Assembly (NCBI RefSeq): GCF_000143415.4
Contig: NW_003314290.1
Location: 62,001 to 126,000 of the forward strand
Origin: Selaginella moellendorffii
Lineage: Eukaryota > Plantae > Lycopodiophyta
Direction: 5' to 3'
DNA length: 64,000 nt
In this document: positions 1 to 55,300 of the stretch, in pieces
Layout of the letters: the number at the start of each line of letters is the position of its first letter
How positions within the stretch are numbered: the first letter of the stretch is position 1
Made by a program: the position numbers and the translations under genes
The notes under the pieces: model-generated
Database searches by the model: none
The model's input: the letters and a program-made list of their open reading frames with translations, nothing else
Told to the model about the DNA's origin: nothing

Positions 1-772
1 TAAAGCCCAAGAAGCAAAGTTGGACTGACATTGTAAAAGAGAAGGAGAGTGCCATAAGAAAAGGCACTATTGGTAGCATCTCTAGCCAATGTCAAGGGAA
101 AAGATGCCCAAGAGTGTGTTTGTATTTGTTCTGTGGATATTGGTTCTTTACACAAGCTCAGGGCCACTGTGTTGCCATGAGATTCTCTCTAGAGGACATT
201 CCATGATCTAAGTCTCAAGAATCATGGTAAATGCCTTTAAACATGGGCTTGGAGAGTTTTATGGCAGTGGCTTCTGGGTGCGTGGGGATCAACCCCATGA
301 GATTCGTTATGATCTACAGTTGTTCTGGAGCTCTTCCAGTGCGTGGAGAGTGGCTGGGCGCAGAGGGCCGCAGATACCCGCGAAGGGAATTCATGCGAGT
401 TGGGCGCCTGCCAGACAGGCGGCCCAAGAGCAGAGGAGGCTATGGGGACGAGTTCGACTGTTCTACTCTGTTGGATGGTACAAGCGATCGCTGTTAACTA
501 GAAAACATTAATTTAACTGCTATATGAATCACTCAGATCTCTCGCAATGGCATCACAAACCAGAGCGGCCATGTCGTGGTTGATGTTCTTCACGCAAATG
601 GTTGATCTGCTCGGAAGAGCCGGATGGCGCTGTGAAGCACGCCTGGAGAGCCTTCTTCCGAAACCTGGATGTCTTTACTTGGTTACATGTAAGCTGCAGA
701 GCGTGTCAAAAGTCTGTGGTGCGGCAGGAAACCTGCTTGCTCCACCGGATAATCGTTTGAAATTTGCTGGTA

Positions 773-934
773 CTACCAAAACTTCGCTCGAATTTTGTAG
801 ACTTTGAACATAGCGACTATGGCAACAAGAAGTGCCATGTAGCCAACCACGATGACAACCGAAAGGCCTGGAAGAACAAATATCGTGTCCATGGACAGGT
901 TCACCAGACCAGTGAGTACGTTTGCCTGTAAGGA

Positions 935-990
<56 letters not shown>

Positions 991-2862
991 GAAAGTATTG
1001 CTTGCTGCTCACCACTAAGAATGTCAATAACATATTGTCGTCGACGGCCTCTACAAGGACGAGTTTTGATGAGAGAAACGCTTCCGCCGAGGCAAAGATG
1101 GCCATAACCTGTCAACAATGTATGCGTTAGAGCCTATATGGTGCAAAAATATATTGGTGAAATGGTAAGATACCTCTAAGTTTTGGGCGAGGACAAACAT
1201 CACGTACGCCATGTTACACTGGCCACAAAGAAGGATTTTGAGATGCATTAGCAAATCACGGAGTATACCGTGCGGCGTGAAACGTTCTCTACGATTGAGT
1301 CAAGCACCACAACCAAAAGCCTGCACAAAAACAAGAGTTAATAGCGAGGTATTAGCAAAGATAGACTTCACCACAGAGCCCCATCAAGAAGCCAAAGCTC
1401 CGCTATGCTTAGCCAGCGGCTGTTTTCATTTGAGGACGAAGCTATCCATTTCAAGAAGCCTCCCGGATTGAAAAATATGTGTTGTCCAAGATGGACAGAC
1501 AGGAGGTACAAGCTCCAGTATCCTGATATCAGCAGCATCAGAAGAGTTCCAGAAAGCGAGTTCTTTACCAAAGATGCTGAAAATGCCTTCTTTGTTCAAA
1601 TCAACAAGTCCGGAACTCCTGTGCGGGGAAAGAATGTAATCTTTTAAACCGCAGCGAAGGGTGAACTGATGCACTGACATAAGAGTGTCAAAACAAACGA
1701 CACATTCCACCAAAACGAGCGACCAACCTGACAGTATGCCAAGCCCAAGATATCCACAATACGAAACAGGCATGCGAATTACTGAAGTAAGAAGAGAAAC
1801 AGCCGCCAAAGTGAAGAAAAAGTTCCAGTGGACGCCATATTCCCCTACGTGAACCTGAACAAACCAATAAGTTTCACCATTTGCAATTGAGTCACAAAGA
1901 AAAACCTGATAATCTGCTCCTTTCGTCGCTATAAGTCTCGCAAAACCCAGAGCCAGCAATGGACTCACGCTTTTAAGAATGTCCACGGTTCTAGTCCTTC
2001 TGAAACAGGAAACAAAGAAAGAAAAGGAGGCTTTTACATGACATCTACAACGAGAAAGGTTACGTACAGAAGATCTCGACTTCTTGCTTGTCTGGAGACT
2101 ATAGCATTCGCAGCAACAAACGATCCAACGCCTAGATCCATCTGGGAAACTTTCACTATCCATCAAACGAAGATCCATCGACTCACCAAGCCAGTGCCAT
2201 AAGTCTCGGTCTTGGCATATCTGCGAGGAAAAGCAGTGAAGTCCACAGCTAGGATTGTAACGCAAGTAACCAGTATCTGCAAGTTTAGGAGCATAAGTTG
2301 CGGACAAACGAGCCAAAACACGTACCATAATAAATCTATAGTATGTCAGGAACGGCCTTTTGAATGGAATAGAAGAGGACTTTAGCTTTTCTCGCTCCAG
2401 AAATGGCAGGAAACTACTCATTCCCAAGAGAATGGAAACGAGAAGCGCGATTCCATAAACTTTGTCCGCAAACACCTGTTAAGAAAGAAGATCTCGTGAG
2501 AAAACGATCACTAAAACCACGGATCTTACCGTGAGGCTCAAGACGGTAGGAAGAACAATGAAAGTAAAATCCAAAGCGAGGCATGTCCAAAAACCCTTTT
2601 GTGGCAAGATTGCAAAGCTCCGGAGAATAACAAGGGCCTGCAATCATTCTTCCACCAGAGCTTCATCTCACAAGGAAACAGAAGAAACAAAGATGTAGGT
2701 ACCGGTATGAGCGCCGAGAGTGCCGCAATCTCGATCTTGGAAGAGCCTTGCAAGTTGCTCACAAACCTGAGGAAGATATCACGCTTGGAATGATCAAAGG
2801 CGAGGGAAACCGAGGCGCGCTTACTCTTCTTTCAAATGCTTGTTTGGATTGAGCTGCCCCAT
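773..2862 (-). CDS. PIGW: GPI inositol-acyltransferase PIG-W/GWT1 homolog (multi-exon)
   Basis: Spliced reading starts [29 protein letters not shown] (ATG 2862). It contains [25 protein letters not shown] and [14 protein letters not shown] and ends [14 protein letters not shown]...YKIRAKFW* (TAG 773-775). Many short GT-AG introns. Confidence 0.9.
941..986. repeat. (AG)23 microsatellite in last PIG-W intron
   Basis: Perfect AG run at 941-986. It reads (CT)n on the sense strand, just upstream of the final acceptor. Confidence 0.97.
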
Positions 2863-3127
2863 CGTCGAATCCACGAATTCACGCTCTCACATCGCCGAAT
2901 TATAACCTAATTTTAAGACGCTTGACTTAGATTGACTTCGCTTAAATCGAAATCAAGCAGTGAATTATAGCAAAAAAACTATTACAACGCTAGTAAATTA
3001 CTATTTGATTTGATGCATTGCTAACACGTTATATTTGTGAAAGCCAAAAATCACGATCTCATAGAAAACAGAAAAATCCAGAGCTGAGAACTATACGCTA
3101 GAGAATGTTTACAGTCAAGAGCGAGGG

Positions 3128-5968
3128 TCATTTCCTGAAGTGGAAGTTAACAACCGACGCTTGGAGGAAGGATTGCTGAATCGATATAGCAAACGGAAAA
3201 ATTGGATGGAACACGAACGCAGCAACTCGCTTGATCCGAGTCTCGTTGGCACCATTCTCTGGACCTGCAATTTTTTTTTATTGCGAGTGTTAGAATGACT
3301 CACTTCTTGCGTTGCTTGGAGCAAATAGCGTACCTGGATTGATCTTGAACTTCAAAATGTGTGGTCTCCTTCGAGATAGGAACTTGATAGGATGCTCCAT
3401 GGAAGGCTTGTGTCGATCAGTAGCAGAGATAAGCTGTCCATGAAGGCTGTGTGAGTGTAGTGGAGAAGCAGCACGAAAAAAGAAAAATAGCCTTTACCTT
3501 CTCATCAAAATGGAAGAGTGAATGGTCGAAATACACAGAAGGGCTTTGGGACTGAGAGTTTACTGGCAACGATGCAAGTGTACGCCTAGCAATCTGAGAG
3601 AAAAAGGCAGTGGTTTACAGAAAAAGACGTAGCTTACGGGTGCGAAGCTGTTCGCTTTGTTGCTGGCTTTGGTATTGATGCAGGCTACTTTTTGCTCACG
3701 GCTTTGCTCTCGCACAAACACGTTGTTTGAAAACGATGTCACGTAGTTCATGTACACGGGGTAGCGTTGTGCGGAGCGAAAGTGATCCGCGAAGTTCTCA
3801 AACAGCTGGAGCAATTCTAGGGAAGAGTTCTGCAAGAAAAAGACCTCAGATCAACAGCACAAAATGGTCTCTCGATCCAAGCTACCTGTTGGAACTCCAA
3901 AATCTCCGTAGTCTCAAAGTTGTATACCACGAAAAATGCAAGCTGCTGAGAAACATCACAGCTCCGAGAAATCTGCACAAGAAACAAGCTAACACATCAC
4001 ATTCCTGCTAATGACACGAGCAAAAGATACGGACCACTCCATCCGCACTGCCAAACTTAATCAGCAAATGGTAGCGGTCCAAGAATTGCACCTGCTAAAC
4101 GGGATAAAAAATGGAAATAATGGCAGCCAGTGTTTTACCTTCCACATCACCAGCTCCGTGTAATGCTGAAAGTGGTAGTAAAAACGTTTCAAGCGTTGCG
4201 CTCGCTGCAAAGTCACCTTCAACTCAAACTCAGCCAAATCTCAGCAAGCAAAAATACCTGGACATGATCGTCGTCATGCTCAAGAATACTTCGGAATATA
4301 AAAGAAAGGAGCCGCTGTTTAATACCGCCCAGCACCGGCGGTCCTGTTTCGGATGATGAATTGGATTGCTCTCGACCAGACCTTGCGTTACTTTCACTTA
4401 GACTTCTAGGAAAAGCTCTCGGCAAACTGTGAACGACGTCATTCCTGCTGCTGGTGACAGGCGTGGAAACATTTGTAGTCGTAGCTTCAATGCTGCTGCT
4501 ATGATGATCCCGTGAGTGAGCATACGCCGGCTCCCAAATATTTCTACCTCCACTTACGTGCCTGCTTCCACTCGAGGAGACAGGAGTCACATTTTGGCCA
4601 GCTTCTCCCGTTGTTCCCAAAGTTAATCCAGATGAGTCGTCAACATGACCAAGCTCACTTCTAGCTTCAAAATCTTGCTGGTGTGGTGTCCTGCTACTCA
4701 GGACGAAATCCGTCCGTCTCTGCGCGTTTGCATTGTTGACGCTGCTCTGCTGGTTCTGGTCGCCGTGACGAGCACCCGTCATGTCATAGGATAATATCAA
4801 AGGTGTATAAGCTGTATAAGTCATTGGCAACTCGGTGACGCCTTGAGAAGATGTGCCAGCCCCAGAAGAAGAGGCACCAAGCAGCCCTCTGAAATAGCAC
4901 TCGAAATCGGATCCGACGGGAATGTGGCTGGAGTCATGATCATTATAGTTCCTTGAGTTCCTGTCGTCGCGAAGGATCTTGGAATCCTTCTCCAAGCTGG
5001 TTCTCGACTCCGTAGTCTCGTTCTCTTTATGTAGGACAGCTTGTGTGCTCTGATACCATGCTTCTTTCTGCAACACATTGTTTGTTTTAAGATTTACAAA
5101 GCAGATGACTCCTAGCTAACTTACTTGAGTTTGAGAACTGACGAGAAGCTCGTCATCTTCCTGGCAAAAGTCGCCAACACTTCGCACATCTACAAAAGTG
5201 CCAGAATCTCTTATCTGCAGGATGTGAACGCATTGGAATCGAACCGAAAGAATCGCCAAAAGATCCTCATACATGAACACCCCCATGTTGTGAGATAAGT
5301 GGATGAAATCGTCATGATAGATACGATCATCCGTGATAATACCATCCGCTAATCTGGAAAGAAACCAACACAAAAGTTATTAATTGCATCGTTTACGTTT
5401 CCATTTGCAAGCTCACCTCACAGCCAGAATTCTTATTTTCTCAATCGATGGCACGCCTGGAACGGCTCCTTGAACCGAAGCTGCATCAGCGTCAGGGCCC
5501 GTAGATGTTGCGAACAGTCCATAGACTCCATTCTCCGTCGTCAAGAAAAAATCCTTACAAATAGTCTCAGTTCCCGTGGCCAAAGCAACACAATAAAGCT
5601 CCGTGAAGAAGCTCTCGAACTTTGCTGCTTTCGGAGGGAGCTCGGCATCTTCAGCTTCACCTTTGACGCAAAAATTCAACCAGTTGAAACGATAAACCAC
5701 CAGGTGCTGGAAGCTTCGAGTGAAAGCTATCAAGTACTGGCCGTCGTTGGTGAATTTGCGGAATGTATGATCGGGACACTCCACATCGTAGACAGTATGA
5801 CTTGGTACAATATTCTCGTACAAAGTCCTCACCGTGTGCAACTGCGAAGAAGAATAGAAGGAAATACAGTATCCCTGTTTCCTTGCATCATACCTGAGAG
5901 CCAGAAGGTTTGCAACTTAGTTGTCGATTGAACAGCCTGTGAGTGATATTCTCACTCCGTTTCACCAT
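3128..5968 (-). CDS. DET1: De-etiolated 1, light-signalling repressor and CUL4-DDB1 adaptor (multi-exon)
   Basis: MVKRSENITHRLFNRQ..., LYENIVPSHTVYDVECPDHTFRKFTNDGQYL, HNMGVFMYEDLLAILSVRFQ, GIKQRLLSFIFR; C-terminus FVFHPIFPFAISIQQSFLQASVVNFHFRK* (TGA 3128-3130). Confidence 0.93.
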
Positions 5969-8650
5969 TCGAGCCGGAAAGAGAAGCCTCTTTACAAGGA
6001 CTTCTGCTGAGAAGAACGAGGCGGGAGGGAAAATGAAGAGCGGCTGCCATACCCATAAAAGAGAAGATCTCGCCGCTGGAGCCTCAACTCGCCGTTCATA
6101 ACAAGCTACTCATAGCGATAGCAATGCTTTCCTGCCACAAGACGGAAAAACAATCAGCAATGCAGAAAACCCAGGAACCACGGCACAACCGGAGAAGAGG
6201 CACGGATCACAGGCACATGAGAATACGGTGGAGGCGAAAAGAGGAGAATGCTGTTGCCCACCTGATTCCACGCTGCTGGCCTTGATATCTCTCTTTCTTC
6301 CAGTCCTCTCTCTCTTCTCTGTGGTGGATGTAGACCCTTGAATTGATAGCCTCTAGAATGGCATCTTTTGGGCGGAGGGGATAGAAGGCTACCGGAAAAG
6401 AGCTCTTTTCCTCCTCACTCCTGCCTTTTAGATCTACAAAGCAATCTACAGCACAAAAACCCCGTAAATAAAAGCCGCGTGGACCGAAAAAAAGGAAAGA
6501 GGAGTGTACGAATTTTTTTTGTTTTCCTAAGATCACCTTGCAAAGATGTCGTCTCAAGTTCACTGGCTGCAATGAGCCATCCATCTGTATGTGACGGAAA
6601 GGTTAAGCCACCGCTTTCTTTCTAAACATAGACGAGGAAACCCACCGTTCGTTTTTTGACTTATCTTCGCCAAGTTGTATCATATCAGATGTTACGTATC
6701 AAGCGCTGCGAATTTTCAGTGATCACAAATGCCAGCTTTCAACGAACGAAGGCACAACTTACCCAAACCAGCTTGTCTTTGTCTTTTCCTGGAATACAGA
6801 AGGAACAGTCTGCGTGCTGCTACATTACGGGCAAAGATGAGAAGAAAACCAACCAGAAGCTGTGAAATCTCACCACGAAAGCTAGCTTTACACAAAGCTG
6901 GAATATGCATTTGGTACTCCCGTGGACAGCGACGGAGACATTGCATTTACACCCTTGACCATCCTGCCCCCACAGCACAGAAAGCACGTTTCGCAAAAAA
7001 CCGCAAGCTTACAAACCAAGAAATATACGTGCCTGCAGCTTGCCTGCAGCTTGCCTGCAGCTGTCATGGGGACTGGCCCTTGTACATAACTCCGCAACCG
7101 ATGGAACAACGTCCGCGTCTCTGCGAGAAAACACAATTAGCCTCTCCTCCCCGCTTTGCGTCTCAACAGGGAGGAGCGGCTTACTGCTTGCTTAGTAACA
7201 GATGGCGGTCTCAATCGGCCCTGCAAAAGGTAGGAAGACGATGAGAAATGGAAAGAAAAAGCTCATAAAAGCACGTTACAATCTCTCGCCGTAAAAGGGA
7301 CTACTCTCTTTGCCGAGAAAACAAGCAACAGAATCTAAGCCACTGGACAGCCACACGTTGAACAAAAGATTCATAACCATCTACGTGTTCAGCTACCATC
7401 CATGAGAAACTCATTTGACACTCTCTGCCAAAAGCCACACCCAACCGATCCAATCCAATCCAATGGAGTCCGACCATCCTGTACACCGACCAGCAGTAGA
7501 CTCTACGGGCTAAGTGAAAAAGATATCCACCTGGAATATATGACCACCGCTCTCGCCTTTAATCGAGACGTGTAGCGCCCACCAAACCACCAAAAGCTTG
7601 AGCGCCCTTGAATAGATAAGGTGACATGGTACCATTACCACCAAGCGCTCCTGACTGGCACTGTTCACAAGCACAACAAACGTTAGCTCCACGAAAAAAA
7701 AAACAAAAACGAGTGACTACAGAAGTCTCACTGTTGCAAAGGCCAGTGAATTGGTGGCCCTGCACTCGAACGTCATCGCGCGCACTGGACAGAAAAAGAA
7801 GTGCTTTCGGAACATTATCGGTTAAGTAAGCCAAAAGAGAGAAACAAACTGTCATAAAAAAACAGATGTCTTACAAGCTTGGCTGTTTCATTTGCTAGAA
7901 TGCGATTCCATGGTCTCCAATGCCCCGAGAATCGCTGCCACCTGAGATCAAAACAAAAGCAAACCTCTTGAGCAAGAAGTTGAAAAAGACAGATTTGTTT
8001 AAGACCGGCATAGCGCTCCAAGGTAAAGACCGAGATGACGGCGGCTCTAAGAAGATTTAAAACGCTACCCCTGTGGAAACAACCTTCGCTATTGGAAAGG
8101 CATGCCACTAGAGAAAGTCAAAGGTACCTGTGAGCGAAACGTTAGCGAGAGCATAAAAACAAGAGCTTCTTGCCTTTTGATTTGCCCCGGCTTTCCTGAA
8201 GAGAGCAAAGACGAAACATGATAGGCCGATCCACCGCGAAATGAAGCACAAGAACACCTCAAACAAGGAAAACATGAGTGTTTTCGTCGATAACGAGAAG
8301 CTGACGATCGTTTGATCTAGAAACGAAGAACTCGGTCACACTGAGAATCACTTAAGGACCTAGATGTCTAGAAGTGCTGGGAATCACGGCTACGATTACA
8401 CGCCAAGCAAGACAATGCCGCTTACCCCAAGCTCTGCCCGAATTCTCCTGCGATTCCTTCGATCGATGCGCTCGCTTTGATCGCTACGCTTGCAGACACG
8501 TGCTGGTGATCAAGCGGAGTCCATCGCGGCAGCGCCTAGAGATCGAAGGCGCAAGACGCTTACCCTAGACCTTCTTCTTTAAACCCTTACGTTTTAAAAC
8601 CCTTTAGTAAAGCACATAGATTCGTGTTTCCTTTCTCTGTGGCGATCGAA

Positions 8651-23150: not shown

Positions 23151-23759
23151 TTAGGTGATCAGATTAAGCCTCTGATGAAGCTTGTCTTGTTGCTGGATGG
23201 CGCAAACAAATTTATTAGAGCACCTTCCAGGTTTATTGTAGTTAACCTAACTAACATGAGAAACTATAGGAATATTCTAAAAGTATTCTATGGTACTCCT
23301 TAAGCATATTCTTCTACCTAAGGGTTAGGGTTCTTGGTTTTACGTGGGAATAGAAAGAAAGAAGAAGCCATGGCAAAGAAGTTCAAAATAGGAAAGAATC
23401 TGTGCATGGCAACTCCCTTGCTATTGTGAGCTGGTCGGTAGCAATCCAACTGCAAGAAGGCCCCTAATTGGCGAGCCAGACAAGCTCAAGAGCAGTGAGA
23501 AGAAAAAGAATAGACACATGGTTCAATCTTGCTACTCCATGTGGATTAAAACTCCCACCCTCTGCCAGTCTCAAAGCATGCTTCAAAAAGGCACTTGCCA
23601 CATTGAAGATGCTAGGGTCGCCCGCTCTTTCCAACCATTAGTTAGTTTCAACTTGCCGCCACCTTTTTGTGAACCAGATGACCTAATATCAAGAAAGGAT
23701 CTAAAAATATCACATAAAAAATGTTAAACGAAATAGGGCTAACTAAAAAATAAGGGCTG

Positions 23760-26700
23760 ATGGAAGTAAGAATGGTGGGCGCCGCTATGGTAAGCGTGGA
23801 GACAACGATTTTGATCATCGGACTACTTGTCTTGGGTATGGCACTGTGGTGGGGTCTTTTGTGGAGCCACGGCCGCAAATCCCGTGCGATTATGCCCGTA
23901 AACACGGGCACAGACCAGGGAGCCGTCATCTTGCTTGTGCGCGAGGAGGACGAGAGGATCGGACATGTATCTGGTGTTGCCGAGGTTGAGCGCGAGGTGG
24001 ATGTAAACAGCTTCTTTGGTCAGGCTTCTACTTTCGAACAAGGTCATTTTATTCTGAGTTGAATGAGTTTGATTCAGTAAACATTCAATTGTTTTGCAGA
24101 TGCCATGAGAGTCAAGCATGGCCATGAGGTTCAGGCCGCTAGCAAGATTGGTGGTGACGTACTCGGAGCTGAGTTTATCGCTGGTTTAGAAGAAACACTC
24201 GCTCGTCGGAGGCAATGGATTGATCGGTGCGCTCGCTCCCTCAACATCCATTTCAAGCTTCTTGAGGAAGGAGACTCTGGCAACACAAATAGTGCTCTGG
24301 AAAAGTGCGAGAAGCAGGATGAGTCGGATCATGAAGAAGAAGAAAAGCTCGTGACAGATCTAGACGTTACTGAGTTGAGCTTGAAGAAGGATCATAATGG
24401 AAGTGGGAAGACAAGTGGAGCTGAATGCATCATCTTTATCGAAGGTATGATCAATGCAAGGGGTCATTAGAAACTAATGTCATTCGTTTACAGGTGAACA
24501 GATCGAGGGGGATCAACTTGTCAGGACTCCCAGGAATCTCGATAGTATGGTGGGCCTTTCATACAGGGACGATGCAGAGGAGAGGAACTCTCAGCCTCTG
24601 GAAGTCGAGATGGTGGAGAGTGGCCAAGTTCCTTGCAGCCAAATCGTCGGCCTTCCACCGCGGGGATTTGAACGGGCTATCGAAGTCCACAAGAGAGCGA
24701 TGTACCACGCGTCTGTTCACGAGCATGAGATCGCGGATGAAGATGAAATGAGAAGGAGAAGGGATATTGACTCCTACAGCGATATACTCGACAACAACAA
24801 AGGTTTGAGTATCCAAAATTCTTCGATGACAGAAAGCTTATCTACGATTGTTTTGCAGGTGCGACTAACTGCATGAAGCTTGAGTGCAAGCACGCTCCTT
24901 CTGAATGGATCAAGGCAAATATTCAAGACTGGAGTGACAGAGATCTCCAGAAAATGAGGGACAAAGGTTCGAGGATCTAAATTCTTCGATGATAAAAAGC
25001 TTATCTACGAATGTTTTTGCAGGTGCGATTAACAGAGAAACCAAGATGGTGGAGCACATGTCTTTGGCTTGTATGGAGCTTGATTTCAAACATGTTCCTG
25101 CGTCATTGTGGGAGTGCAAGGCGGATAATCAAGATGGGAGCGATGGAGATCTCAAGGGAAGTAAAAGCTTTCTTGGTCAGGCTTCTACTATCGAACAAGG
25201 TAATGTGATTTTGAATTTGACTCAGTAACCATTCAATTGTTTTGCAGATGCCATGAGATTTAAGCATGGCCACGAGATTCAGGCCGCCAGCAAGATTGGT
25301 GATGACGTGCTGGGAGCTGAGTTTGTCGCCGGTTTAGAAGAAAAACTCGCTCGTCGGAGGCAATGGATTGATCGGTGCGCTCGCTCCCTCAACATCCATT
25401 TCAAGCTTCTTGAGGAAGGAGACTCTGGCAACACAAATAATGCCCTGGAAAAGTGCGAGGAGCAGGATGAGTCGGATCATGAAGAAGAAGAAACGCTTGT
25501 GACAAGTTCACACAGAGACTCATTGGCAGATCTGGGCGTTGCTGAGATTAGCTTGAAGGCAACAGCTGTGGAGGAAGTTGAGAAGACAAGTGAAGAATGC
25601 ATCATCTTTATCGAAGGTATGATCACTCTCTGCAGGGATATGTAGAACTCACACGTCATTCGTTTACAGGTGACCAGATTGAGGGGGATCAACTTGTCAG
25701 GACTCCCAAGAATCTTGATAGTGACAATAGGATGGTGGTTCTTTCAGATGCAAAGGAGAGGAAATCTCAGCCTCTGGAAGTCGAGATGGTGGAGAGTGAC
25801 CAAGTTCCTCGCAGCCAAATCCTCGGCCTTCCACGCCGCCAAAAGAGAGACCATCTTGACTGGGAATCTGCTATGGAAGTGTCTCGACTCCGCAAGAGAG
25901 TGAAGTACCACGCTTATCACATCGACTACTACGACGCGCAGCTCAAGGAAAACTCGATCCAGGCTTGGAGATCAGACTTTTCTTGGCTTGTTCACGAGCC
26001 TGCGATCATGGACGAGGATAAGATGAGAAGGAGAAGGGAGTCTCATATTGACTTCTTCAACGGCTACACCGCTGAGCTCGAGAATTATTACAAAGGTAAG
26101 ACGATCTAAAGTTTTCCATGATAGAAAGCTTAGCTACGATTGTTCTGCAGGTGCGATTAATAGCGAAACCAAGATGGTGCTTGATTTCGAGCATGTTCCT
26201 GCGTCATTGTGGGAGTGGATCGAGCCGGACAAGCAAGATTGGAGAGATGGAGATCTCAAAGGAATGAGACATGACTGTAACAGCTTTTCTAGTCATGCCT
26301 CTACTATCAAAGAAGGTAACTTGATTCTGAATTTGATTCAGTAACCATTCAATTGTTTTGCAGATGCCACGAAATTCAAGCCTGGGCATGAGATTCAGCC
26401 CGCTAGCAAGAATGGTGGTGATGTACTCGGAGCTGAGTTTATCGCTGGTTTAGAAGAAACACTCGCTCGTAGGAGGCAATGGATGGATTGGTGTGCTCGC
26501 TCCCTCGACATCCATTTCAAGCTTCTCGAGAAAGAAGACTCGGCTGGCAACACGGGGAATGCTCTGGAAAACTGGGAGGAGCAGGATGAAAAGCCCGTGA
26601 CAAGTAGTGACTCAGAAATGATCAAAGAAGTGGCAGATCTGGAGGTTACTGAGTCGAGCTTGAAGGGAACAGCTGTGGAGGAAGCAGCTTCTTCCAGAAT

Positions 26701-27115
26701 CAACGAGCTGGACGTTGTCATAGCTGTGCGTGATCAAGCTCCAGCTTCCGCTGTGGAAGAAGTAGCGAACCATGATCAAGCACCAGTTCCTTCCCGACAC
26801 AACGAACAGGGGAATCTCGACGTTGTCATAGCTGTGCAGGAAGAAGTGCCATTGTTTTTAAGTGGGGAGGACGATCGTGATGGAGTTGAGAAGACGAGTG
26901 GATCCTTTCCTCCGGCTGCCGAGCAAGCGGATCTTCTTGGCCGTCTTGCAACATGGTTTGGTGGTAGAAGAAGAAAAGTGGACAGAGCAACTTGCGGGCT
27001 TCCATCTCGGGAGGATGGACCAGTACACCTCTTTTACGATCATAAGGACGACTGTTACAAACAACTTGGGGAATTTTATGGCACAGGGAAGGTGTCCGTG
27101 GAGGTTGTCCGGTGA
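23760..27115 (+). CDS. Unknown ~977-aa protein: N-terminal TM anchor plus three internal repeats; 9 exons, all introns phase 1
   Basis: Exons 23760-24042, 24100-24444, 24494-24802, 24859-24966, 25023-25199, 25248-25616, 25670-26095, 26151-26315 and 26364-27115 join via GT-AG introns into one stop-free 2934-nt frame. The motif GAEFxAGLEExLARRRQWxDxCARSLxIHFKLLE occurs three times. The 3' end could splice on at GTGAG 27112. Confidence 0.75.
24005..26700 (+). repeat. Three tandem ~1.1-kb direct repeat units (exons plus introns)
   Basis: CATTCAATTGTTTTGCAGATGCCA recurs at ~24082, ~25230 and ~26346. Confidence 0.93.
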
Positions 27116-27445
27116 GCCGTGCCATGACGGAGAAGAGAGCGCAGCTCAAGGTTCTCAAAATTTTCCACCATGAAAAAATTTCATCGGACAAGGAGCTGAG
27201 ATCCTCACTGAGGAGCTCGTGGGGAGGTCCAAAGACGATTAGCAAACTTAACTACTATATCATGGTAAACATCATCTACGAGAGCGTTCGTCACCCAACA
27301 GCCATGGCAGCAAGGTGATCTTCAGCAGCTTTCGTCACTGACTGTGGAGTAGAGCGCAAACTTGTGCCAGTACCTGCATGGTTGATCTCTTTACTTAAAG
27401 AAACTACTTATTAATATATTTATATACATATATATATCGACTTCG

Positions 27446-27890
27446 TTAGAAAGCAGAACTCACAAGTGGACGAGGTGTCTGCCAGACCATAAGAACAATC
27501 CCCAGTGTGAGGTCCCGACGACATGATCTCCGATTCTGTCTTGTCGGGCAGCCTTGAGCGCGATCAAACAGATAGCCTCCGTCTAGCGCCAGCAGCGGCA
27601 AGATATTCACTACTGCTAGATTCAAGTTGTGCAGCGCCGTGAACTGGAACAGCCCCGCAACATCCAACCTCACAACCTCAGCTCCCACGGCAACGATGGC
27701 AACCGGGCCTGAGAGTTTGTCTGCGGTTTTCATCACCGCCTGCGCCAATCCCTCCACGACTTTGCTGCCCAGCTTCCAAAACTCGCGGCTGGCTTGCACG
27801 GTGGCGTCCGCCAGATCTCTGGTCTTCACCCTGGATGTTTGGCGAGGGCTGGACGCCAATCCTTCCATACTCATCCTGTCCGGAAAGAAG
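27446..27890 (-). pseudogene. C-terminal fragment of a chloroplast M50 metalloprotease (RseP/ARASP-like)
   Basis: KLSGPVAIVAVGAEVVR..GLFQFTALHNLNLAVVNILPLLALDGGYL contains the NxxPxxxLDGG motif. The HExxH N-terminal part is absent and the C-terminus is frameshifted. Confidence 0.82.
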
Positions 27891-27899
27891 ACGTCCTTA

Positions 27900-30270
27900 C
27901 AGAGCTTTGGCTTCTTGTGGGGCTCCGTCGTAAAGTCGCTATTAACTTTTGTTCTTGTGAGACTCAATCGTAGAGAAACGAACTAATGCATCTCAAACCG
28001 TTCCTTGTGGCCATGAGCAGCAAGGCATTCATACACTTCTCTCACTGTTTGGTACAGGCAAACGTACCCACTGGTCTGGTCAACCTGTCCATGGACACGA
28101 TATTGTTCTTCCAGGTTTATCGTGGTTGGCTACATGGCACTTCTCGTTGCCATAATCACTATGTTTAGCGAAGTTTGATAGCAAATTTCAGTGACAAACG
28201 ATTAACCAGCTTTCCTGCCACATCACAGACGTTGGACTCGCTCTGCAGCTTACTTGTAACCCTCTTGTAAGTTGAAGTGAAAAGCCATTACAAATTTCCA
28301 CACAACTGGCATTAGTCGGGTACAGACACCCTGGGTGGATGGAGATGGGCTGGAGAAATTATATTAGCAGGAGTCCACGCTAGTCAACTCAAGAATTGAA
28401 GGAAGTCGGAAAAGAGATATAAAATATGTTCTATCTATCTATCTATATATATAATCTCTTCATTAATTGTACTATATATTTTCAGAATGTTATAAAATAT
28501 TTTTAATAATACTTTTATCATATATATATATATATTTTAAAATCACTTATAATTATTTATCTTTTTATTAATTCACTTTCTAACATAACAAACAACAACA
28601 AAGCTATACTAAACAAAATTATGCTTTCTAGGGGTAATGAATATGCGTAAAATATGCATAAATATTCTGGGATATTCTACTATCTAACTGTTGTTATTCA
28701 TTTAGATTTAAATCATAAAATTTCCTAAACACTTTCTAATATATTATAATTTATTATGCAATGAGATCGATCTTGTGTTTACAAACATGTTTATAGTTAT
28801 ATACTTCATGTGTTAAATCTGCTTTCAATACACATTATAAACTCAGATTATGTAGTGATCAATTCATCATTACATAATGATAAATAGGAATAACACCAAA
28901 CAAAGCATTGTTGCATATTGTTTTGGTGATGAATTTAGTAGAAATATTTTAAATTTAAAATATCATTAAAACTGCTGAATTAAATTATTTTATTTACTTT
29001 ATAAAATACAAAATAACAATCGCAGATGAATTAAAAAATTATAAAAATTATAAAAAATAAAATTCACATGTATAGTACCTTTATGTTAATTGTTACATAG
29101 CTGTATATTTAAGAGTTAAAACAACTTTTCAAATATAAAGTGAACTATAAAATATTGAATTTAGCAATACTAAGTTGATCTTGTCAACCATTTCAGCTGA
29201 GGTTTATGTTTGTCACAAACGTTTGACATGCTTTGTAATTTACGTGTAACCAAGTAAGATATCCAAGTTTTGGAAGAAGGCTCTCTAGGTGTGCTTCACA
29301 ATACCATCTGGCTCTTCTGAGTAGATCAACCATTCATATATAGTGACTCTAGGAACAGCCAGCCGAAGTGGTGAAAGCCTCTGAAGGGCCGAGAAACCAT
29401 CCATGGCTATTGCGTGAAGAACATCAACCATGATATGGCTGCTGTGGTAGATGATGTTTTTGACGCCATTGCGAGAAATCTGAGCGATTCATATAGCAGT
29501 TAATTTAATGTTTTCTAGTTTCATATTGCTAGTAAAGCTAGCAGCTATTGCCTGTACCATCCACATCCCTATAGACTAGGCCAGGAATCCCCAAGGGCAA
29601 CTTCCTCCAAGCTCTCGCCCAAGATCCTCTACTTCACTGCTCTTGGGCCGCCTGTTTGGTAGGCTCCCAATGCACCAGCTCCCACAAATTCCCCCTCACA
29701 GGCATTTGCAGGCCTGTGAGAGATCTTTCCGTCCAGCCACTCTCCACGTGTAGAGTGGCAGGATATACTGATTGAGCAAACATGAAAACGTTCAAATGCG
29801 GTCATTGTCAGTAACAAAATAAGAAAACCCTAAAAAAATGTTTAATATTTCCATGAAGAACCTCCATGGCAATGCTTAAATCCATGAATATTGAGCATTT
29901 TCAGATCCTCTGCCAATGCCCAATCCTTCTCCATATCAGTTTGTCTCCCAGCATCTCTCTTCAGCATCGTGTCACTCCGCTCAAGAGCCCTAACAGAAAA
30001 GAACATGGTTAGAAAACGTGTAACAAACAAGAGCAGCAAATGCAGTGTTTGCAGGGCCAGTGTGTTACTATTGGCAACCCATGGGATGCTCTCACACAAG
30101 CTCAAGGCTACATTATAAACCAGGTATAAAAGGCAAGGAGAAGAGGTGAAGAAGGTAGAAGCCAAGCCTCCATCCCATCCCCTCTAGAGAATCTTGTGTT
30201 TAAAGGCATTTACTAGTGATTCCTAGGACTTAAATCATGGAGTGTCCTCTGGAGAGGATCTCACAGCCTG
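27900..30270 (+). pseudogene. Inverted, degenerate duplicate of the PIG-W 3' exons and downstream flank (~170-1400)
   Basis: 28055-28170 (CAGGCAAACGTACCCACTGGTCTGGTCAACCTGTCCATGGACACGATA) is the reverse complement of the last PIG-W exon. 29250-29520 matches rc 496-690, 29635-29750 matches rc 340-440 and 30195-30265 matches rc 170-245. An AT-rich block at 28260-29210 interrupts it. Confidence 0.85.
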
Positions 30271-49373: not shown

Positions 49374-52300
49374 TGTAAGCGACTAAATTTTCCATTTCTA
49401 CTTTAGTCACTTAACCACACCTTCGACCATTTGGAGGAGTCTCATTCACAACTTCCATAAGTCCCACTCAGGACTTGGGGCTTGCTAGCCCCGAGAATGG
49501 TGTCCATGCCACTCAACCTTTGCACTTAGTCCCAGTGCTCCATGTGTCCGGTCCCATGACCGACACCCCAAGGCACCACCAACATACCAGTTTGTTACGC
49601 TAGGCCATGCCCAATCACCTTGGTCACATCGGTGGTCCAACACCACTTACATTGTAATCCCGTCTCTCCAAGACTGGGCCATCCGTCCATGAGTGGTCAT
49701 CCCAGATCCACCCTTTAGCATCCTTAGGATGCCCACATAGAGTAGTCTTCTAGTGTAGAGACCAAAGATACGGTCATGTGAGGAGGAAGTCCCAGAGGAC
49801 CATGGGACTTAATGGTCAAGCTTGTGAGCCTTGATCCAGTGGCAGTGTTGGCGAACACGGCTAGGGACAAAAAAAGGACTTGGTGGGGACCGGAAAAGAG
49901 ATATTGGGGAAGGCTAATCCTCATGTCTGTGAGCATCCTAAGGATACTAAAGAGTGGATCTGGGATGATCACTCATGGATGGATGGCCCATTCTATGAGA
50001 GACAGTACAATGATGCAGATGGTGTTAGACCACCGGTGTAACCAAGGTGAAGGGGCATGGCCTTAGTGTAACAAGCAGAGATATCGGTGGTACCTTGGGA
50101 TGTCGGTCATGGGATCGGACACGTGGAGCACTTGAACCAAGTGCAAAAGTTGAGTGGCGGGTATGCCATTTTCGGGGCTAGCAAGCCCAAGTCCGAAATA
50201 CGACTTATGGAGGTTGTGAGTGAGACTCCTCCAAGTGGTCGGTGGTGTGGTTAAGTGACTAAAGTATAATGGAAAATTTAGTCGCTTACAATTTGGTATC
50301 TGAGCTATTCCTTAGTTTGACCTTTATTGGTGCTCAAGTATATCATCACTGGTGTTGGCATTGGAAGGTTTTAGGAGTGGACCTATCCTTGAGGAGTAGC
50401 AAGTCGGAAAGACATGGCTCTCCAGTACAATTCAGGTATGAACTTGTAGGTGAGGTGGTGGATAGAAAAGGGCGAATAAGGGAATGACTTTGGGATCTTG
50501 GGAACAATATAAATGTTTTCTCAGAGAGTTGAGGATGTGATCCAAATGAGCATTTGACTTAGCAAACTAGCTGATGTAGTTGTGATAAACAAATACAGTT
50601 GGGATCACGGGAAAGATGTAGACTCCAAAATAAAAGAGTCACAAGATGACCCTTATATAGTTGAGGCTGGTGCTCATAAATTTGAGACTGGAATTGATGA
50701 CCGTGGGAGGTCAAATATAGAAGAGGACACAAGTCCTTGAAATGGTAGCTGGGGCTACCTTTAATAAATGCTGGCACCTCAAAAGTAGGACCTCACGGGT
50801 CGTTGGATGACAAAGTCCAAAAAGCTGGATGACTCAAATAGAGTCAAGGAATAATTCTAAAGGATTAATGGAAGCATTTGGACGAAGGTGTGTTGTACCC
50901 CACAAAAGATGGGGGGGATCATAAGATCCAAGTATGAGAACGAAGGGTATCTCATTGATGGCAGAATGTGCTATACTAAAGTCGTGGGAAAGGTGTTCCC
51001 CAAAAAAGAAAGCAATTTTGGCATAAAATTGTGTATGAACACTATGGTGCAGTGCTAACTGATAATTGGTATAAGAAACAATCATATTGGTTTTTGGCAA
51101 AGACCTAGACAAAAGTAAGAAGTGTCATAGAGGTAGGCTCGTGGAGTTGATGGTGTGGAAACACCAAGTGTGCCAAGACATGCTACCTTGAGGTCAAGTT
51201 TGCGGGTTCATGAGAACCACTTCCAAAGGAATTTCAATGGAAATGGGAATGGCATAGCCTAAGCTGGAAGGTAAGTGGTTAGAGTGTGGTGACCCAAATA
51301 ATGATGGAGGTGTGAAAGCACCAGCAATGAGTTGTAGGACTTGACAATTATAAGGCAACTAAGCAAAAAGTGCAAAATAATTGGTTAAATTGGTAGAAGG
51401 TAAATACCTAAGACTTCTTATGGGGATAAGGAAGTTAGATATACCCTTATGGGGGAGAAACTACTTATGTTGCAAAATAGTAAGTCAATATTGTAAAAGG
51501 AATGCTCATTGCCAAAGAAGGCCATCATTGGGACACTTAAACACTCTAAAACACCAGAAAGTGGTGTTTGGTGTCACGAGGGCATTTTATAAGGCCCAAG
51601 GGACTAAGTCCCTAGCAAATGATGGATAGGAGGTGCTATCCAAAGGTCCAAGGTTTTGGAGACGGGAAAAATCCGCCTACCCGATTTGGACAAAGCCAAA
51701 AATGGGATTTTAGCAAAGGCTAATAATGGGCAAATAGAGGCCCATAAGTAGCAATGTTAATCCCGGTATGTGGGATTATAAAGTGAGCATGTCCAGATTG
51801 AGGGACCATTCCCTAAGTTATTGGGTAGGTTCATCCCTATGAATACTTGCTAAGGCATGGTAGAAGGTGCAAAGCTATCCTCCTAGTCTGGAGGAGAATA
51901 ACCAAAGGAAACGTATAAGGCCAAAAGGCAAATAGTATTGGGATGGAACTGAACCATAGAAATCGAAGGGCATAACCAATGGTGGTTATGCAAGTTGGGA
52001 GTGGAGAATCAAGAGGGTGTTCAAGGATGTTGTTACTAGCAACCACGAGGTCATGAAGAGTCTAAAATGTGGAATAATCCATGTTAGACCATATGGTGAG
52101 TAGAGAGCTTGCGAAGGAGAAACCTTAACAAGTTAAGGAACAGAGTTCCTTGAACGTTCCCAAAGACAATTCTAGGTGGATAACTACCTAGAAAGCCAAG
52201 TGTAAATGGTTCCTAGAATGCGCAAAATCAAAGTGGCGCAACAGAAGCGTGGTCTTGAAGCTGGTCATGAGGCGAGGCTATCAAGGTTGGGGAAGTAATT

Positions 52301-55300
52301 CCCAAGTGTTCAAAGAGAGGGTTTTGAACAAAAGTCGATGGTTAAAGACTTTCACGCTTATTCATGAACCATGTTACGGTGGCCAAATGACTTGCTAAGT
52401 GAGATTGGCAAATCAAGGGAACAAATCCCCTAGTCAAAGCTGCTAACTTCGAAAGGGGTGGCCCATGGGGCCGAGTATGGAGGAGTCCATGCATGATCAC
52501 AAACTTGCCAAGTGAGAGGATTTGGCAGTGCGGAGGAACTAGGTTCCTAAGTTGTGATCTATAGTGCGTTTTAAGTATATGTTGGTGCACTAACGTGGGG
52601 AGTCACGCCAAACATCTTGTGTGATGTCATCTGTAGATGCATATACAGAGGTTGGGTTCAAGTCCCGACCCTCTAGTGCTTGGGTTCAAGTCCAAAATCA
52701 CTAGGGCGTGGTGATGGTTTGGAATATGAGAACACTCATTTTTCGGTGGTTATGGACTCTCAATGAAGAGACTGGTTTGGGCACACTGCCAAACGAAGGA
52801 TGCCTCGGAGTCGTGATGCACAGTTAGATTGCTTAGTGTGGCTCGACATATATAACTTGAACACTTGGTGAGAGTGGCACCAAGGATGTGGTGAATGAAA
52901 TGGGGACACCCAATCTCAGTTACTATAGACCCCTAGCCGAAAGGGCTAGCTTGGGTGCACTGCCAAATGTGGGGGATGCCCCTAGGGTCATTGTGATCAA
53001 AGTGTTGGTTTGAAGCATTGATGATAGTGTGGCTTGGTCAAGGTGACCAAGTGGGAAAAACACCTAAGGGAAATGATTTGTGATTATGCGATGGCATAAT
53101 GAGTCTGAAGAAAGTAGTATCTAGGACTTATAGAGGTTGTGAGTGACACTCCTCCAAGTGGTCGATGGTGTGGTTAAGTGATTAAAGTAGAATGGAAAAT
53201 TTAGTTGCTTACACACACCATCAACTCCACAAGCCTACTTTTGTAACACTTTGCATTTGTGTCTAAGTTTTTGCCAAGACCAACAGAGTTGTTTCTCATG
53301 CTAACTATCCATTAGCACTACCCCATAGCATTCGCACACAACTCTAAACTGAAGTTGCTTTCTTCTGGGAACACCTTTCCTATGACTTTAGTATGGCACA
53401 TTCTGCCATCACTGAGATACCCACTATTCCTATACTTGGATTTTATGATCCTCCCCATCCTCCATAAGCACTACACACCTTAGTCCAAATGCTTCCATCA
53501 ATCTTTTAGGACCATTCCTTGACTCCAATCAAGTCATTTAGCTTCTTGGACTTTATTAATCCCACGACATATAAGGTCTTATTTTTGAGGTGCCAGTTTG
53601 TTAGAATACAACTTTTTGTATTCATGTCCTACTCACCAAGACCACCATTACAAGTGTTATCCCAACACTTGATTATTTTTTGTTCTTTTATGGGCTACCT
53701 TCACCCCTTAGGACTATCTGTCCATATGATGAGAATATAAACTCATCCTCTAAGTACACCCCGAACTCCTAGAGTTGTTCCAACATTTATTCAAAGTAGC
53801 TCCAGCTACCATTTCAAAAATTTATGTCTTCATCCATATTTGACCTCTCACGGTCCTTAATTCCAGTCTCAAATTCATGAGCACCAGCCTCAACTATATG
53901 AGGATAATCTTGTGACTCATTTATTGTTTTGGAGTCTTTATCTTTCACGTGATCCTAACTATAGTTGCCTACCACAACTACAATAGCCAGTTTGCTAAGT
54001 CAAACGCTCATTTGGATCATATCCTCAACTCTCTAAGGAAACTTTTATACTGTTCCCAAGATCCCAAAGTCATTCCCTTATTCGCCCTTTTCTATCCACC
54101 ACCTCATCTACAAGTTCATACCTGAATTGTACTGGAGAGCCCATGTCTTTCCGACTTGCTACTCCTCAAGGATAGGTCCACTTCTAAAACCTTCCAATGC
54201 CAACACCAGTGATGATATACTTAAGCACCAATAAAGGTCAAACTAAGGAACAGCTCAGATACCAAATTGTAAGCGACTAAATTTTCCATTATACTTTAGT
54301 CACTTAACCACACCACCGACCACTTGGAGGAGTCTCACTCACAACCTCCATAAGTCATATTTCGGACTTGGGCTTGCTAGCCCCGAGAATGGCATCCCCG
54401 CCACTCAACTTTTGCACTTGGTTCAAGTGCTCCACGTGTCCGGTCCCACGACCGACACCCAAAGGTACCTCCGACATATTGGCCCGTTACACTAAGGCCA
54501 TGCCCATTCACCTTTGCCACACTGGTGGTCCAATACCACTTGCATCACAATCCCATCTCTCCAAAACTGAGCCATTCGTCCACGAGTGGTCATCCCAAAT
54601 CCACTCTTTAGTATCCTTAGGATGCCCATAGATATGGGGAATAGCCTTCCCCAATATTCCTTTGTCAGTCCCTATCAAATCCCTTTCTGTCCATGGCCGT
54701 ATTCGCCAACACTACCACTGGATCAAGGCCCGCAGACCCGACCACTAAGTCTCATTGTCCTTTGAGACTTCCTTACCATGTGACCGTATTCTTAGTCACT
54801 ACACTAGAGGATTGCTCCTCCTCCTTTCCACAATCTGGGACTTTGGGACAACATTTCAGAACACCGTGGCCCTACACGAGCCTCAGGGGTACTCTTTCCA
54901 TCTTCCGTCTTTTGGTGCTCTAGCCATGGGCTTAGAGCAAGGTTCCATTGAGCCACACTAGGTGTCCAAGTAGGTAATGCCACCCACACTTTGACTGAGA
55001 GCATCGACCATTTGATCTCCCAGGGGAACTAAAGCCAGCTCTTGAACACTTCACCAAGCTACCCCGCTTGTCAGTCTGTATTCACTCTAGCTTTGGACTT
55101 CCCAGTGGTTATCCCATCACCCAACACCTTGGTACAACTTTCCTGGGCCAAACTGGCCTTCCTTGGCCAAATTGGCTCCACTAGAGTCCTCCCCTACTAT
55201 ACTTTTGGAGCTCATCAAACCCCCTAGGGTCTGGGAGACGAACAATTTGGGCTTTCACCCTCTCAGACTCGAACTCAAACTCAGACTCAGACTCAGACTC

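What the first reader, a model, noticed from the sequence alone, without database searches (positions are those of the whole stretch)
23760..27115. Unrecognised ~977-aa membrane-anchored protein built entirely from phase-1 exon cassettes
Seen: the ORF track shows only fragments, but splicing at canonical GT-AG sites gives one stop-free 2934-nt frame. All 8 introns are phase 1 and all 7 internal exons are multiples of 3 (345, 309, 108, 177, 369, 426, 165 nt). One TM helix (ILIIGLLVLGMALWWGLLW) precedes three copies of a ~50-aa module (GAEFxAGLEExLARRRQWxDxCARSLxIHFKLLE) separated by faster-diverging acidic linkers. A second module (HVPASLWE..QDWxDGDL) also occurs three times. Indels between copies are all frame-preserving, although the neighbouring sequences are pseudogenes. 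Inference: a lineage-specific gene under selection, expanding by symmetric exon duplication. Any internal exon can be skipped without frameshift, so many isoforms are possible. I do not recognise the domain.
Basis: partly seen in the sequence, partly recalled or inferred. Interest (0 to 1): 0.8.

Follow-up and report, generated by a model that had tools for sequence, protein, structure and literature searches.

The report
Selaginella orphan gene of repeated exon blocks
This is a real, transcribed and spliced gene found only in the spikemoss Selaginella moellendorffii; it encodes a membrane-anchored, acidic, mostly disordered protein whose length changes (2 to 4 units) as blocks of frame-neutral exons are duplicated or lost, which is a tidy example of a known way genes evolve rather than a new kind of system.

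Summary
Nine exons joined at eight GT-AG introns (48-57 nt, all phase 1) give one 2934-nt frame of 977 aa. RNA contigs from three runs carry seven junctions as joints and the eighth as loose ends. A DNA run carries none.

The window is Selaginella moellendorffii scaffold GL377594.1. The gene is already deposited as hypothetical protein SELMODRAFT_415907, but that model lacks the N-terminal membrane helix.

An exhaustive phmmer search of 1.84 billion representatives found only S. moellendorffii copies. These are two inverted paralogous loci on each of two haplotypes, with 2, 2, 3 and 4 helix modules. Pfam, PDB and the ESM Atlas gave nothing. AF2 and ESM models are mostly disordered.

Selection is weak but real:
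- dN/dS is 0.34-0.87 between loci and 0.22-0.60 in the conserved module.
- Every exon indel is a multiple of 3, while flank indels are of any length.

The one apparent exon-skipping joint matches the ordinary junction of the 4-unit allele, so isoform diversity is not shown. Function is unknown. My inference is a multivalent tether facing the cytosol. This is a new member of a known kind, of modest interest.

The parts
23760..24042 (+). Exon 1 (283 nt). In-frame ATGs lie at 23760, 23772 and 23787. The membrane helix I17-W35 is encoded at about 23808-23864 and is followed by the basic stretch HGRKSR. The last ~14 codons are homologous to the ends of exons 5 and 8.
   Evidence: the RNA contigs start at 23757-23777
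24100..25199 (+). Repeat unit 1, exons 2-5 (345, 309, 108, 177 nt) with introns 2-4. Exon 2 holds the conserved helix module plus an acidic linker. Exon 3 is the B type. Exon 4 is a short extra copy of the C type. Exon 5 is the C type.
   Evidence: junctions seen in RNA
25248..26315 (+). Repeat unit 2, exons 6-8 (369, 426, 165 nt) with introns 6-7.
   Evidence: junctions seen in RNA
26364..27115 (+). Exon 9. It holds the third copy of the helix module and linker, then a unique acidic tail and C-terminus, with the stop codon at 27113-27115.
   Evidence: RNA contigs run unspliced across 26860-27185, which supports this stop rather than the old JGI 3' extension
24043..24099 (+). Intron 1 (57 nt, phase 1), type A. 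Its copies are intron 5 (25200-25247) and intron 8 (26316-26363), which differ from it and each other by 8-15% (p-distance).
24445..24493 (+). Intron 2 (49 nt, phase 1), type B. Its copy is intron 6 (25617-25669).
   Evidence: splicing shown by loose ends at 24446 and 24492 in X3 and by a joint for intron 6
24803..24858 (+). Intron 3 (56 nt, phase 1), type C. Its copies are intron 4 (24967-25022) and intron 7 (26096-26150).
27116..27268 (+). 3' untranslated region, at least as far as RNA coverage reaches.
   Evidence: depth table and records 6 and 27
27425..27889 (-). Truncated, degenerate Peptidase_M50 fragment (pseudogene) that travels with the gene in three of the four copies. It is not part of the gene. 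No RNA coverage was seen.

Best explanation
**Shown**
- This is the protein-coding gene SELMODRAFT_415907 of Selaginella moellendorffii.
- It belongs to a family of two inverted paralogous loci, about 25 kb apart, each present on both haplotypes. No relative was detected anywhere else.
- It is transcribed and spliced at all eight predicted junctions.
- The coding region is a tandem array, about 1.1-1.15 kb per unit, of a 3-4 exon block. Every intron is phase 1 and every internal exon is a multiple of 3, so gain or loss of a block, or of a single exon as with exon 4, never breaks the frame.
- The four genomic copies carry 2, 2, 3 and 4 helix modules. Units are mosaics of one another. The array therefore changes by unequal recombination and gene conversion within the species.
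- Selection keeps the frame open. It constrains a ~55-aa module more than the acidic linkers.

**Inferred**
- The protein (pI 4.9, net charge -73) is anchored by one N-terminal signal-anchor helix. Basic residues follow the helix, so the positive-inside rule puts the short N-terminus outside or in the lumen and the bulk in the cytosol.
- The bulk is mostly disordered. It displays 2-4 copies of a conserved, partly basic and amphipathic helix spaced by acidic linkers.
- The most likely mode of action is a membrane-tethered multivalent scaffold. The repeated helix would be the binding element and the copy number would set valency or reach. The partner and the membrane are unknown.
For: - **Gene model:**
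- **Splicing:** RNA runs X1, X3 and X8 carry the junctions, and DNA run X2 does not.
- **Identity and family:**. Loci and synteny come (L002 1-8451 equals window 8451-1 at 100%). All four copies are intact, with 5, 5, 9 and 13 exons.
- **dN/dS between loci:** 0.34-0.87. The bootstrap upper bound is below 1 in four of the six between-locus comparisons, and also in the comparison of the two duplicated units within L001.
- **Module versus linker:** dN/dS is 0.22-0.60 in the module and 0.58-0.92 in the linker.
- **Indels:** all 20 exon indel runs listed in five overlapping pairwise comparisons are multiples of 3 (some are probably the same event seen twice). Only 1 of 18 runs is a multiple of 3 in the W/L002 3' flank.
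- **Gene conversion:** the exon 2 module differs by 0.6% from the module of the allele's exon 10 (its third full unit), whose linker is of the exon 6 type. Paralog coding divergence is about 0.03 against 0.19-0.23 in their 5' flanks.
- **Membrane helix and charge:**
- **Disorder:** ESM model pLDDT 0.36. The AF2 unit model has mean pLDDT 35, and only the module helix reaches about 70.
- **Amphipathic half of the helix:** the segment RQWIDRCARSLNIHFKLL has a hydrophobic moment of 0.58, among the highest in the protein.
Against: - No functional data of any kind exist. Topology and localisation rest on sequence rules alone.
- Overall dN/dS is high (0.5-0.9 between units; 0.87 with a CI spanning 1 for L002 vs L003), as expected for a young or weakly constrained gene.
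- Over its full 38 residues the module helix is not significantly more amphipathic than shuffles (about 10-15% of shuffles reach it).
- Restriction to one species is only as good as the databases. Genomes of other Selaginella species could not be searched directly. Exons 1, B and C were searched only with the word-indexed tool.
- The RNA evidence comes from assembler contigs of runs that also contain the allele and paralog, so which locus gave each junction is not always clear.
Confidence: 0.6

Rival explanations
1. A young, transcribed proto-gene with no real function. Under this reading the ORF and the unit structure persist only because the duplications are recent and gene conversion keeps the copies alike.
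For: - dN/dS is 0.5-0.9 between units and 0.87 (CI 0.48-1.90) between L002 and L003.
- There are no homologues outside the species.
- The protein is predicted to be disordered.
- There are clear signs of gene conversion.
Against: - All four copies are intact over 645-1289 codons.
- All exon indel runs are multiples of 3, while flank indels are of any length.
- Several dN/dS intervals exclude 1.
- The module is far more constrained than the linkers (pN 0.04-0.09 against 0.20-0.37).
- Units differ by up to 13% in the module and far more in the linkers, yet none has a stop.
Confidence: 0.15
2. A surface-exposed or secreted repeat protein, with topology opposite to my reading or with the hydrophobic segment cleaved as a signal peptide. 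Repeat number would then vary under diversifying selection, for example in interactions with microbes.
For: - Repeat-number polymorphism between haplotypes is typical of surface proteins; this comparison rests on general knowledge.
- Cysteines are conserved in the module and at the end of the linker.
- The dN/dS is relatively high in the linkers.
Against: - The hydrophobic stretch is 19-21 residues, long for a signal-peptide core. It is followed by four basic residues in HGRKSR and has no small-residue cleavage motif (sequence).
- The positive-inside rule favours a cytosolic C-terminal bulk.
- No dN/dS estimate exceeds 1.
Confidence: 0.15
3. A highly diverged member of a known family, or a domesticated transposon protein, that sequence searches missed.
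For: The only lead is a sub-threshold Pfam match of exon 2 to DUF1068, a plant membrane-protein family (E 0.0024, 18.2 bits against a cut-off of 25).
Against: - The match is absent from the other two module copies and from the full-length proteins.
- The PDB profile search was empty at E up to 10.
- Atlas feature scores are all 0.61 or lower, below the chance level quoted by the tool.
- There are no other copies in the window and only four loci in the genome records, which is unlike a transposon.
Confidence: 0.07

Closest known systems
Disordered proteins assembled from symmetric exons by internal tandem duplication (Schad, Kalmar & Tompa 2013, PMC3632108)
   Same: The protein is mostly disordered and is encoded by phase-symmetric exons that arose by internal tandem duplication. 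The modules are short functional elements set in disordered linkers.
   Different: That work describes human genes, whereas this is a lycophyte orphan. Here the unit is a 3-4 exon block, its copy number differs between haplotypes of one individual, and the original breakpoints lie inside exons.
Classical phase 1-1 exon shuffling of extracellular modules in animals (Patthy; cited from general knowledge, not checked here)
   Same: All introns are phase 1 and all internal exons are symmetric (1-1), so cassettes can be inserted, duplicated or lost in frame.
   Different: - No module is shared with any other gene, so there is duplication but no shuffling between genes.
- The modules are not folded, disulphide-rich domains.
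- The protein is probably cytosolic.
- The organism is a plant.
Pfam DUF1068 (PF06364), plant membrane proteins of unknown function
   Same: There is a weak local similarity of exon 2 to profile positions 18-96 of 165. In this protein that region lies downstream of a single N-terminal membrane helix.
   Different: The score of 18.2 bits is below the 25-bit cut-off. The match is not reproduced by exons 6 and 9 or by the full-length paralogues. The protein should not be filed as a member.
Taxonomically restricted (orphan) genes of plants
   Same: No detectable homologue exists outside one species. The protein is acidic and disordered, evolves fast, and is expressed.
   Different: It is unusually long for an orphan (977 aa, 9 exons). 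It is multi-copy, with a clear internal growth mechanism and evidence of frame-preserving selection.

Membership tests
Pfam DUF1068 (PF06364) | Score at or above the curated gathering threshold (25 bits) for the protein | tested here: not met
   Exon 2 alone scores 18.2 bits. Exons 6 and 9 and the full-length P0002 and P0003 give no match.
Gene built of symmetric (phase 1-1) exon cassettes | All internal exons are multiples of 3 and are flanked by introns of the same phase | tested here: met
   The window gene has seven internal exons of 345, 309, 108, 177, 369, 426 and 165 nt and eight phase-1 introns. The same holds in all internal exons of the three other copies.
Gene built of symmetric (phase 1-1) exon cassettes | Cassettes are demonstrably duplicated or lost in frame | tested here: met
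   The allele L001 has an extra 4-exon unit, and locus 2 has a single unit. Exon 4 with intron 3 is a single-exon duplicate.
Gene built of symmetric (phase 1-1) exon cassettes | Cassettes are used as alternative exons (exon skipping) | tested here: inconclusive
   One joint, 25197->26362, appears in one run with 22 nt on its short side. It matches the normal e5-e6 junction of allele L001 at 78/80. Only contigs were available, not reads.
Single-pass signal-anchored membrane protein | One hydrophobic segment of about 19 or more residues near the N-terminus, none elsewhere, with charged flanks | tested here: met
   The Kyte-Doolittle 19-residue mean is 2.3 at aa 16-35 and at most 0.87 elsewhere. 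The segment is followed by HGRKSR.
Single-pass signal-anchored membrane protein | Experimental membrane association and topology | not testable with these tools
   This needs fractionation, protease protection or imaging.
Taxonomically restricted (orphan) gene | No homologue outside the lineage in sensitive searches | tested here: met
   phmmer with exon 9 against 1.84 billion representatives found two hits, both S. moellendorffii. The full-length and unit-profile word-indexed searches found the family only. Limit: genomes of other Selaginella species could not be searched as DNA.
Intrinsically disordered protein | Low predicted order over most of the chain | tested here: met
   The ESM Atlas model has pLDDT 0.36 and pTM 0.19. 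In the AF2 unit model 281 of 320 residues are below pLDDT 50. These are predictions only.

The most novel reading that the evidence does not exclude
A gene family born within the Selaginella lineage in which protein length and valency are tuned by the copy number (2-4) of a frame-neutral exon block. That copy number is still polymorphic between haplotypes, and the family is kept uniform by gene conversion between two inverted loci. The product would be a membrane-anchored multivalent scaffold whose repeated basic amphipathic helix binds a conserved partner; a calmodulin-like protein is one guess. It could then serve as a natural system for watching a new protein grow by cassette duplication.
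Probability: 0.15. Interest if true: 0.5.

Novelty: new member of a known kind. Interest (0 to 1): 0.3.

Why it matters
This is a clean, fully documented case of a known process: a disordered repeat protein growing by tandem duplication of phase-symmetric exons. It comes from an early-diverging vascular plant, where such cases are rarely described.

Four intact copies (two loci on each of two haplotypes) carry different unit numbers. One genome assembly therefore shows unequal recombination, single-exon duplication and gene conversion together.

On the practical side, the public model of this gene (951 aa) lacks the membrane helix. The old models of two paralogues run on into antisense pseudogene sequence. 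Both could be corrected.

The finding does not open a long-standing question, and the function remains unknown.

Tried and rejected
- **Pfam.** I scanned every exon and the full-length paralogues. Only sub-threshold noise came back (DUF1068, DUF6232, DUF6303, Phage_Orf51 and others). I rejected these because none is reproduced across the repeat copies.
- **PDB.** A sequence search with a profile of ten units was empty at E up to 10.
- **ESM Atlas.** I searched by features and by structure on the whole protein, one unit and the tail. The best score was 0.61 and TM was below 0.5. The neighbours are unrelated repeat or disordered proteins.
- **AF2 of one unit**. Mean pLDDT was 35, so I did not run fold searches. 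The tool itself warns that a low-confidence model gives meaningless matches.
- **Exon skipping.** The joint 25197->26362 and the 'goes back 1176' joint are explained by the 4-unit allele or by assembler switching in a 34-nt identical stretch. I rejected both as evidence of isoforms.
- **Co-duplication of the M50 fragment.** My first idea was that the fragment dated the locus duplication. I rejected it because the same fragment lies next to the gene at the other locus too, so it predates that duplication.
- **Tandem Repeats Finder** found nothing because its period limit is 500. The repeat tool did find the 1148 and 1116 nt spacing.
- **Literature.** A search for the six locus tags and accessions returned no paper.
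- **Earlier scan notes.** They held nothing on this gene.
Full report
**What is in the sequence**

It has nine exons:
- 23760-24042
- 24100-24444
- 24494-24802
- 24859-24966
- 25023-25199
- 25248-25616
- 25670-26095
- 26151-26315
- 26364-27115

The eight introns are 48-57 nt and all phase 1. The internal exons are 345, 309, 108, 177, 369, 426 and 165 nt. The frame is 2934 nt with a single terminal stop, giving 977 aa.

The repeat tool finds three copies of a 293-nt core spaced 1148 and 1116 nt apart. A tblastn of the model against the window finds only self-matches, so there is no further copy in these 64 kb.

**Transcription and splicing**

Three RNA runs and one DNA run of the same organism were laid on 23300-27700. 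The RNA contigs carry joints at introns 1, 3, 4, 5, 6, 7 and 8, at exactly the predicted positions once the '+2 cut' is applied. Intron 2 is shown by loose ends. The letters behind 24446 are the start of exon 3, and those before 24492 are the end of exon 2. The DNA run has none of these joints.

RNA coverage starts at about 23757-23777 and is zero upstream. The start codon could therefore be 23760, 23772 or 23787, and all three keep the hydrophobic helix. Contigs run unspliced across 26860-27185. This supports the stop at 27115 rather than the 3' extension used in older models of the paralogues.

**Organism and public record**

An exhaustive phmmer search with exon 9 against 1.84 billion cluster representatives returned two proteins only. 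Exact look-up names them and their cluster mates as Selaginella moellendorffii hypothetical proteins:

| Id | Length | Accession | Locus tag |
|---|---|---|---|
| P0001 | 951 aa | EFJ22738.1 / D8RYK2 | SELMODRAFT_415907 |
| P0003 | 1289 aa | EFJ33184.1 | SELMODRAFT_406784 |
| P0002 | 657 aa | XP_024526154.1 | LOC9633975 |
| P0004 | 720 aa | EFJ32846.1 | SELMODRAFT_406789 |

P0001 is this window's gene, but it starts at an internal Met that cuts the membrane helix. A full-length word-indexed search added P0005 (857 aa, SELMODRAFT_415899) on the window's own scaffold.

The gene is therefore already deposited, as a hypothetical protein. No paper mentions any of the identifiers.

**The family and its layout**

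I fetched the three other loci and aligned them to the window.
- **Paralogue position.** L002 1-8451 is the reverse of window 1-8451 at 100%. The window is therefore GL377594.1:62001-126000. The paralogue 415899 lies about 1.5 kb left of the window start on the minus strand, about 25 kb from our gene in divergent orientation.
- **Haplotype partner of the window locus.** L001, on scaffold GL377571.1, is colinear with window 18-37.6 kb, at 98.5% over the last 4.2 kb. It has the same downstream PPR, DnaJ and LRR-kinase genes.
- **Haplotype partner of L002.** L003 carries the same Det1, GWT1, M50, PPR and LRR neighbours.

Mapping the proteins back to the DNA gives intact models everywhere:

| Copy | Exons | Length |
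|---|---|---|
| Window | 9 | 977 aa |
| L001 | 13 | 1289 aa |
| L002 | 5 | 645 aa |
| L003 | 5 | 657 aa |

All introns are phase 1 and all internal exons are multiples of 3. The unit is exon A (helix module plus acidic linker), exon B and exon C. The first unit of locus 1 has an extra short C-type exon. The helix module is present 3, 4, 2 and 2 times in the four copies. L001 differs from the window by one whole extra 4-exon unit, which is a block copy-number difference between haplotypes.

**Selection**

Between units within the gene, dN/dS is 0.5-0.9.

Between loci it is 0.34-0.87. The bootstrap intervals exclude 1 in four of the six between-locus comparisons. They also exclude 1 in the comparison of the two duplicated units within L001.

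Within exon A the first 56 codons have pN 0.04-0.09 and dN/dS 0.22-0.60. The linker has pN 0.20-0.37 and dN/dS 0.58-0.92.

The strongest signal comes from indels. All 20 exon indel runs listed across five overlapping pairwise comparisons are multiples of 3 (lengths 3 to 48; some are probably the same event seen in more than one comparison). In the non-coding flanks runs have any length. For example, only 1 of 18 is a multiple of 3 in the 3' flank between the window and L002.

Short introns of the same type are as similar as the exons or more so. That is expected when most of a 50-nt intron is splice signal.

**Concerted evolution**

The module of window exon 2 differs by 0.6% from that of L001 exon 10, yet the linker of L001 exon 10 is of the exon 6 type.

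The two loci differ by about 0.03 in coding sequence (dS about 0.06). This is no more than the haplotypes differ (dS 0.03-0.05). Their 5' flanks, however, differ by 0.19-0.23.

The last ~14 codons of exon 1 are homologous to the ends of exons 5 and 8. The repeat period therefore does not coincide with intron positions.

Together these points indicate unequal recombination and gene conversion among units and loci, rather than intron-mediated shuffling.

**Isoforms**

The one joint that looks like skipping of exons 6-8 (25197->26362; one run, 22 nt on the short side) is 78/80 identical to the ordinary exon 5-exon 6 junction of the 4-unit allele.

A 'goes back 1176' joint has 34 identical letters on both sides, so it is what an assembler does in a repeat.

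An 18-nt in-frame variant at the exon 8-9 junction, seen in all three RNA runs (table 5c), shows that another copy is also expressed and spliced.

There is thus no evidence for exon skipping, and none against it.

**The protein**

There is one hydrophobic segment (aa 17-35, Kyte-Doolittle mean 2.3), followed by HGRKSR. Nothing else exceeds 0.87. The protein has pI 4.9 and 193 acidic against 120 basic residues.

The ESM Atlas model of P0001 has pLDDT 0.36. An AF2 model of one unit, built with a ten-unit alignment, has mean pLDDT 35. Only the module helix (residues 20-56 of the unit) reaches about 70. The C-terminal half of that helix is basic and amphipathic, with a moment of 0.58.

Pfam, PDB and Atlas searches give no family. 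A sub-threshold DUF1068 match to exon 2 is not reproduced by the other copies.

**Reading**

The following points are shown:
- It is a real, spliced coding gene restricted, as far as the databases reach, to S. moellendorffii.
- It is built of frame-neutral exon blocks whose number varies between haplotypes and loci.
- It is under frame-preserving, weakly purifying selection that is strongest on a ~55-aa helix module.

The following points are inferred:
- It is a signal-anchored protein with its acidic, disordered bulk in the cytosol (positive-inside rule).
- It acts as a multivalent tether whose repeated helix is the binding element.

The general phenomenon is already described for human genes: disordered proteins assembled from symmetric exons by internal tandem duplication (PMC3632108). 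This is a new, well-resolved plant example.

**Neighbour**

The sequence at 27425-27889 (-) is a truncated and degenerate Peptidase_M50 fragment. It has no RNA coverage. An intact M50 gene lies next to the other locus.

A copy of the fragment also lies just 3' of the gene at L002 and L003, so it predates the locus duplication. L001 has lost most of it.

Noticed in passing
window 23760-23840 and P0001: The public protein model for this gene (EFJ22738.1, 951 aa) starts at an internal Met (MALWWG...) in the middle of the membrane helix. The RefSeq and JGI models of the paralogues start at the ATGs equivalent to 23772 and 23787.
   Followed up: partly
L002 12231-13199 and L003 12257-12393: The old JGI models of the paralogues (P0005 857 aa, P0004 720 aa) add 3' exons that run antisense through the M50 pseudogene fragment. 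The RNA contigs over the window's equivalent region are unspliced and support the shorter C-terminus.
   Followed up: partly
window 27425-27889 (-): A truncated, degenerate Peptidase_M50 fragment (Pfam E 2.6e-14; aa 278-434 of the 443-aa intact copy). It has an apparent frame disruption and no RNA coverage.
   Followed up: yes
window 23363-28261 versus L002/L003: The two paralogous loci form an inverted duplication of about 4.6-4.9 kb that flanks about 25 kb holding GWT1, Det1, a dynamin-like gene and others. The coding parts are much more alike than the 5' flanks, which suggests gene conversion between the inverted copies.
   Followed up: partly
window 49374-50290, 54268-55850, 57131-58860: A repeated element of about 1.7 kb with dinucleotide or hexanucleotide-like runs (ORFs reading LGLGLG and SISDSISD) occurs three times in the window and once upstream of the allele (L001 5776-7430). 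It is probably a transposon or satellite.
   Followed up: no
I did not examine it.
   Followed up: no
window 27585-28717 versus L001 14938-15131: The haplotype partner L001 lacks about 0.9 kb of 3' flank, including most of the M50 fragment, that the window, L002 and L003 retain. L001 exon 1 also carries a net 21 nt of extra in-frame sequence that reads as a partial internal repeat.
   Followed up: partly
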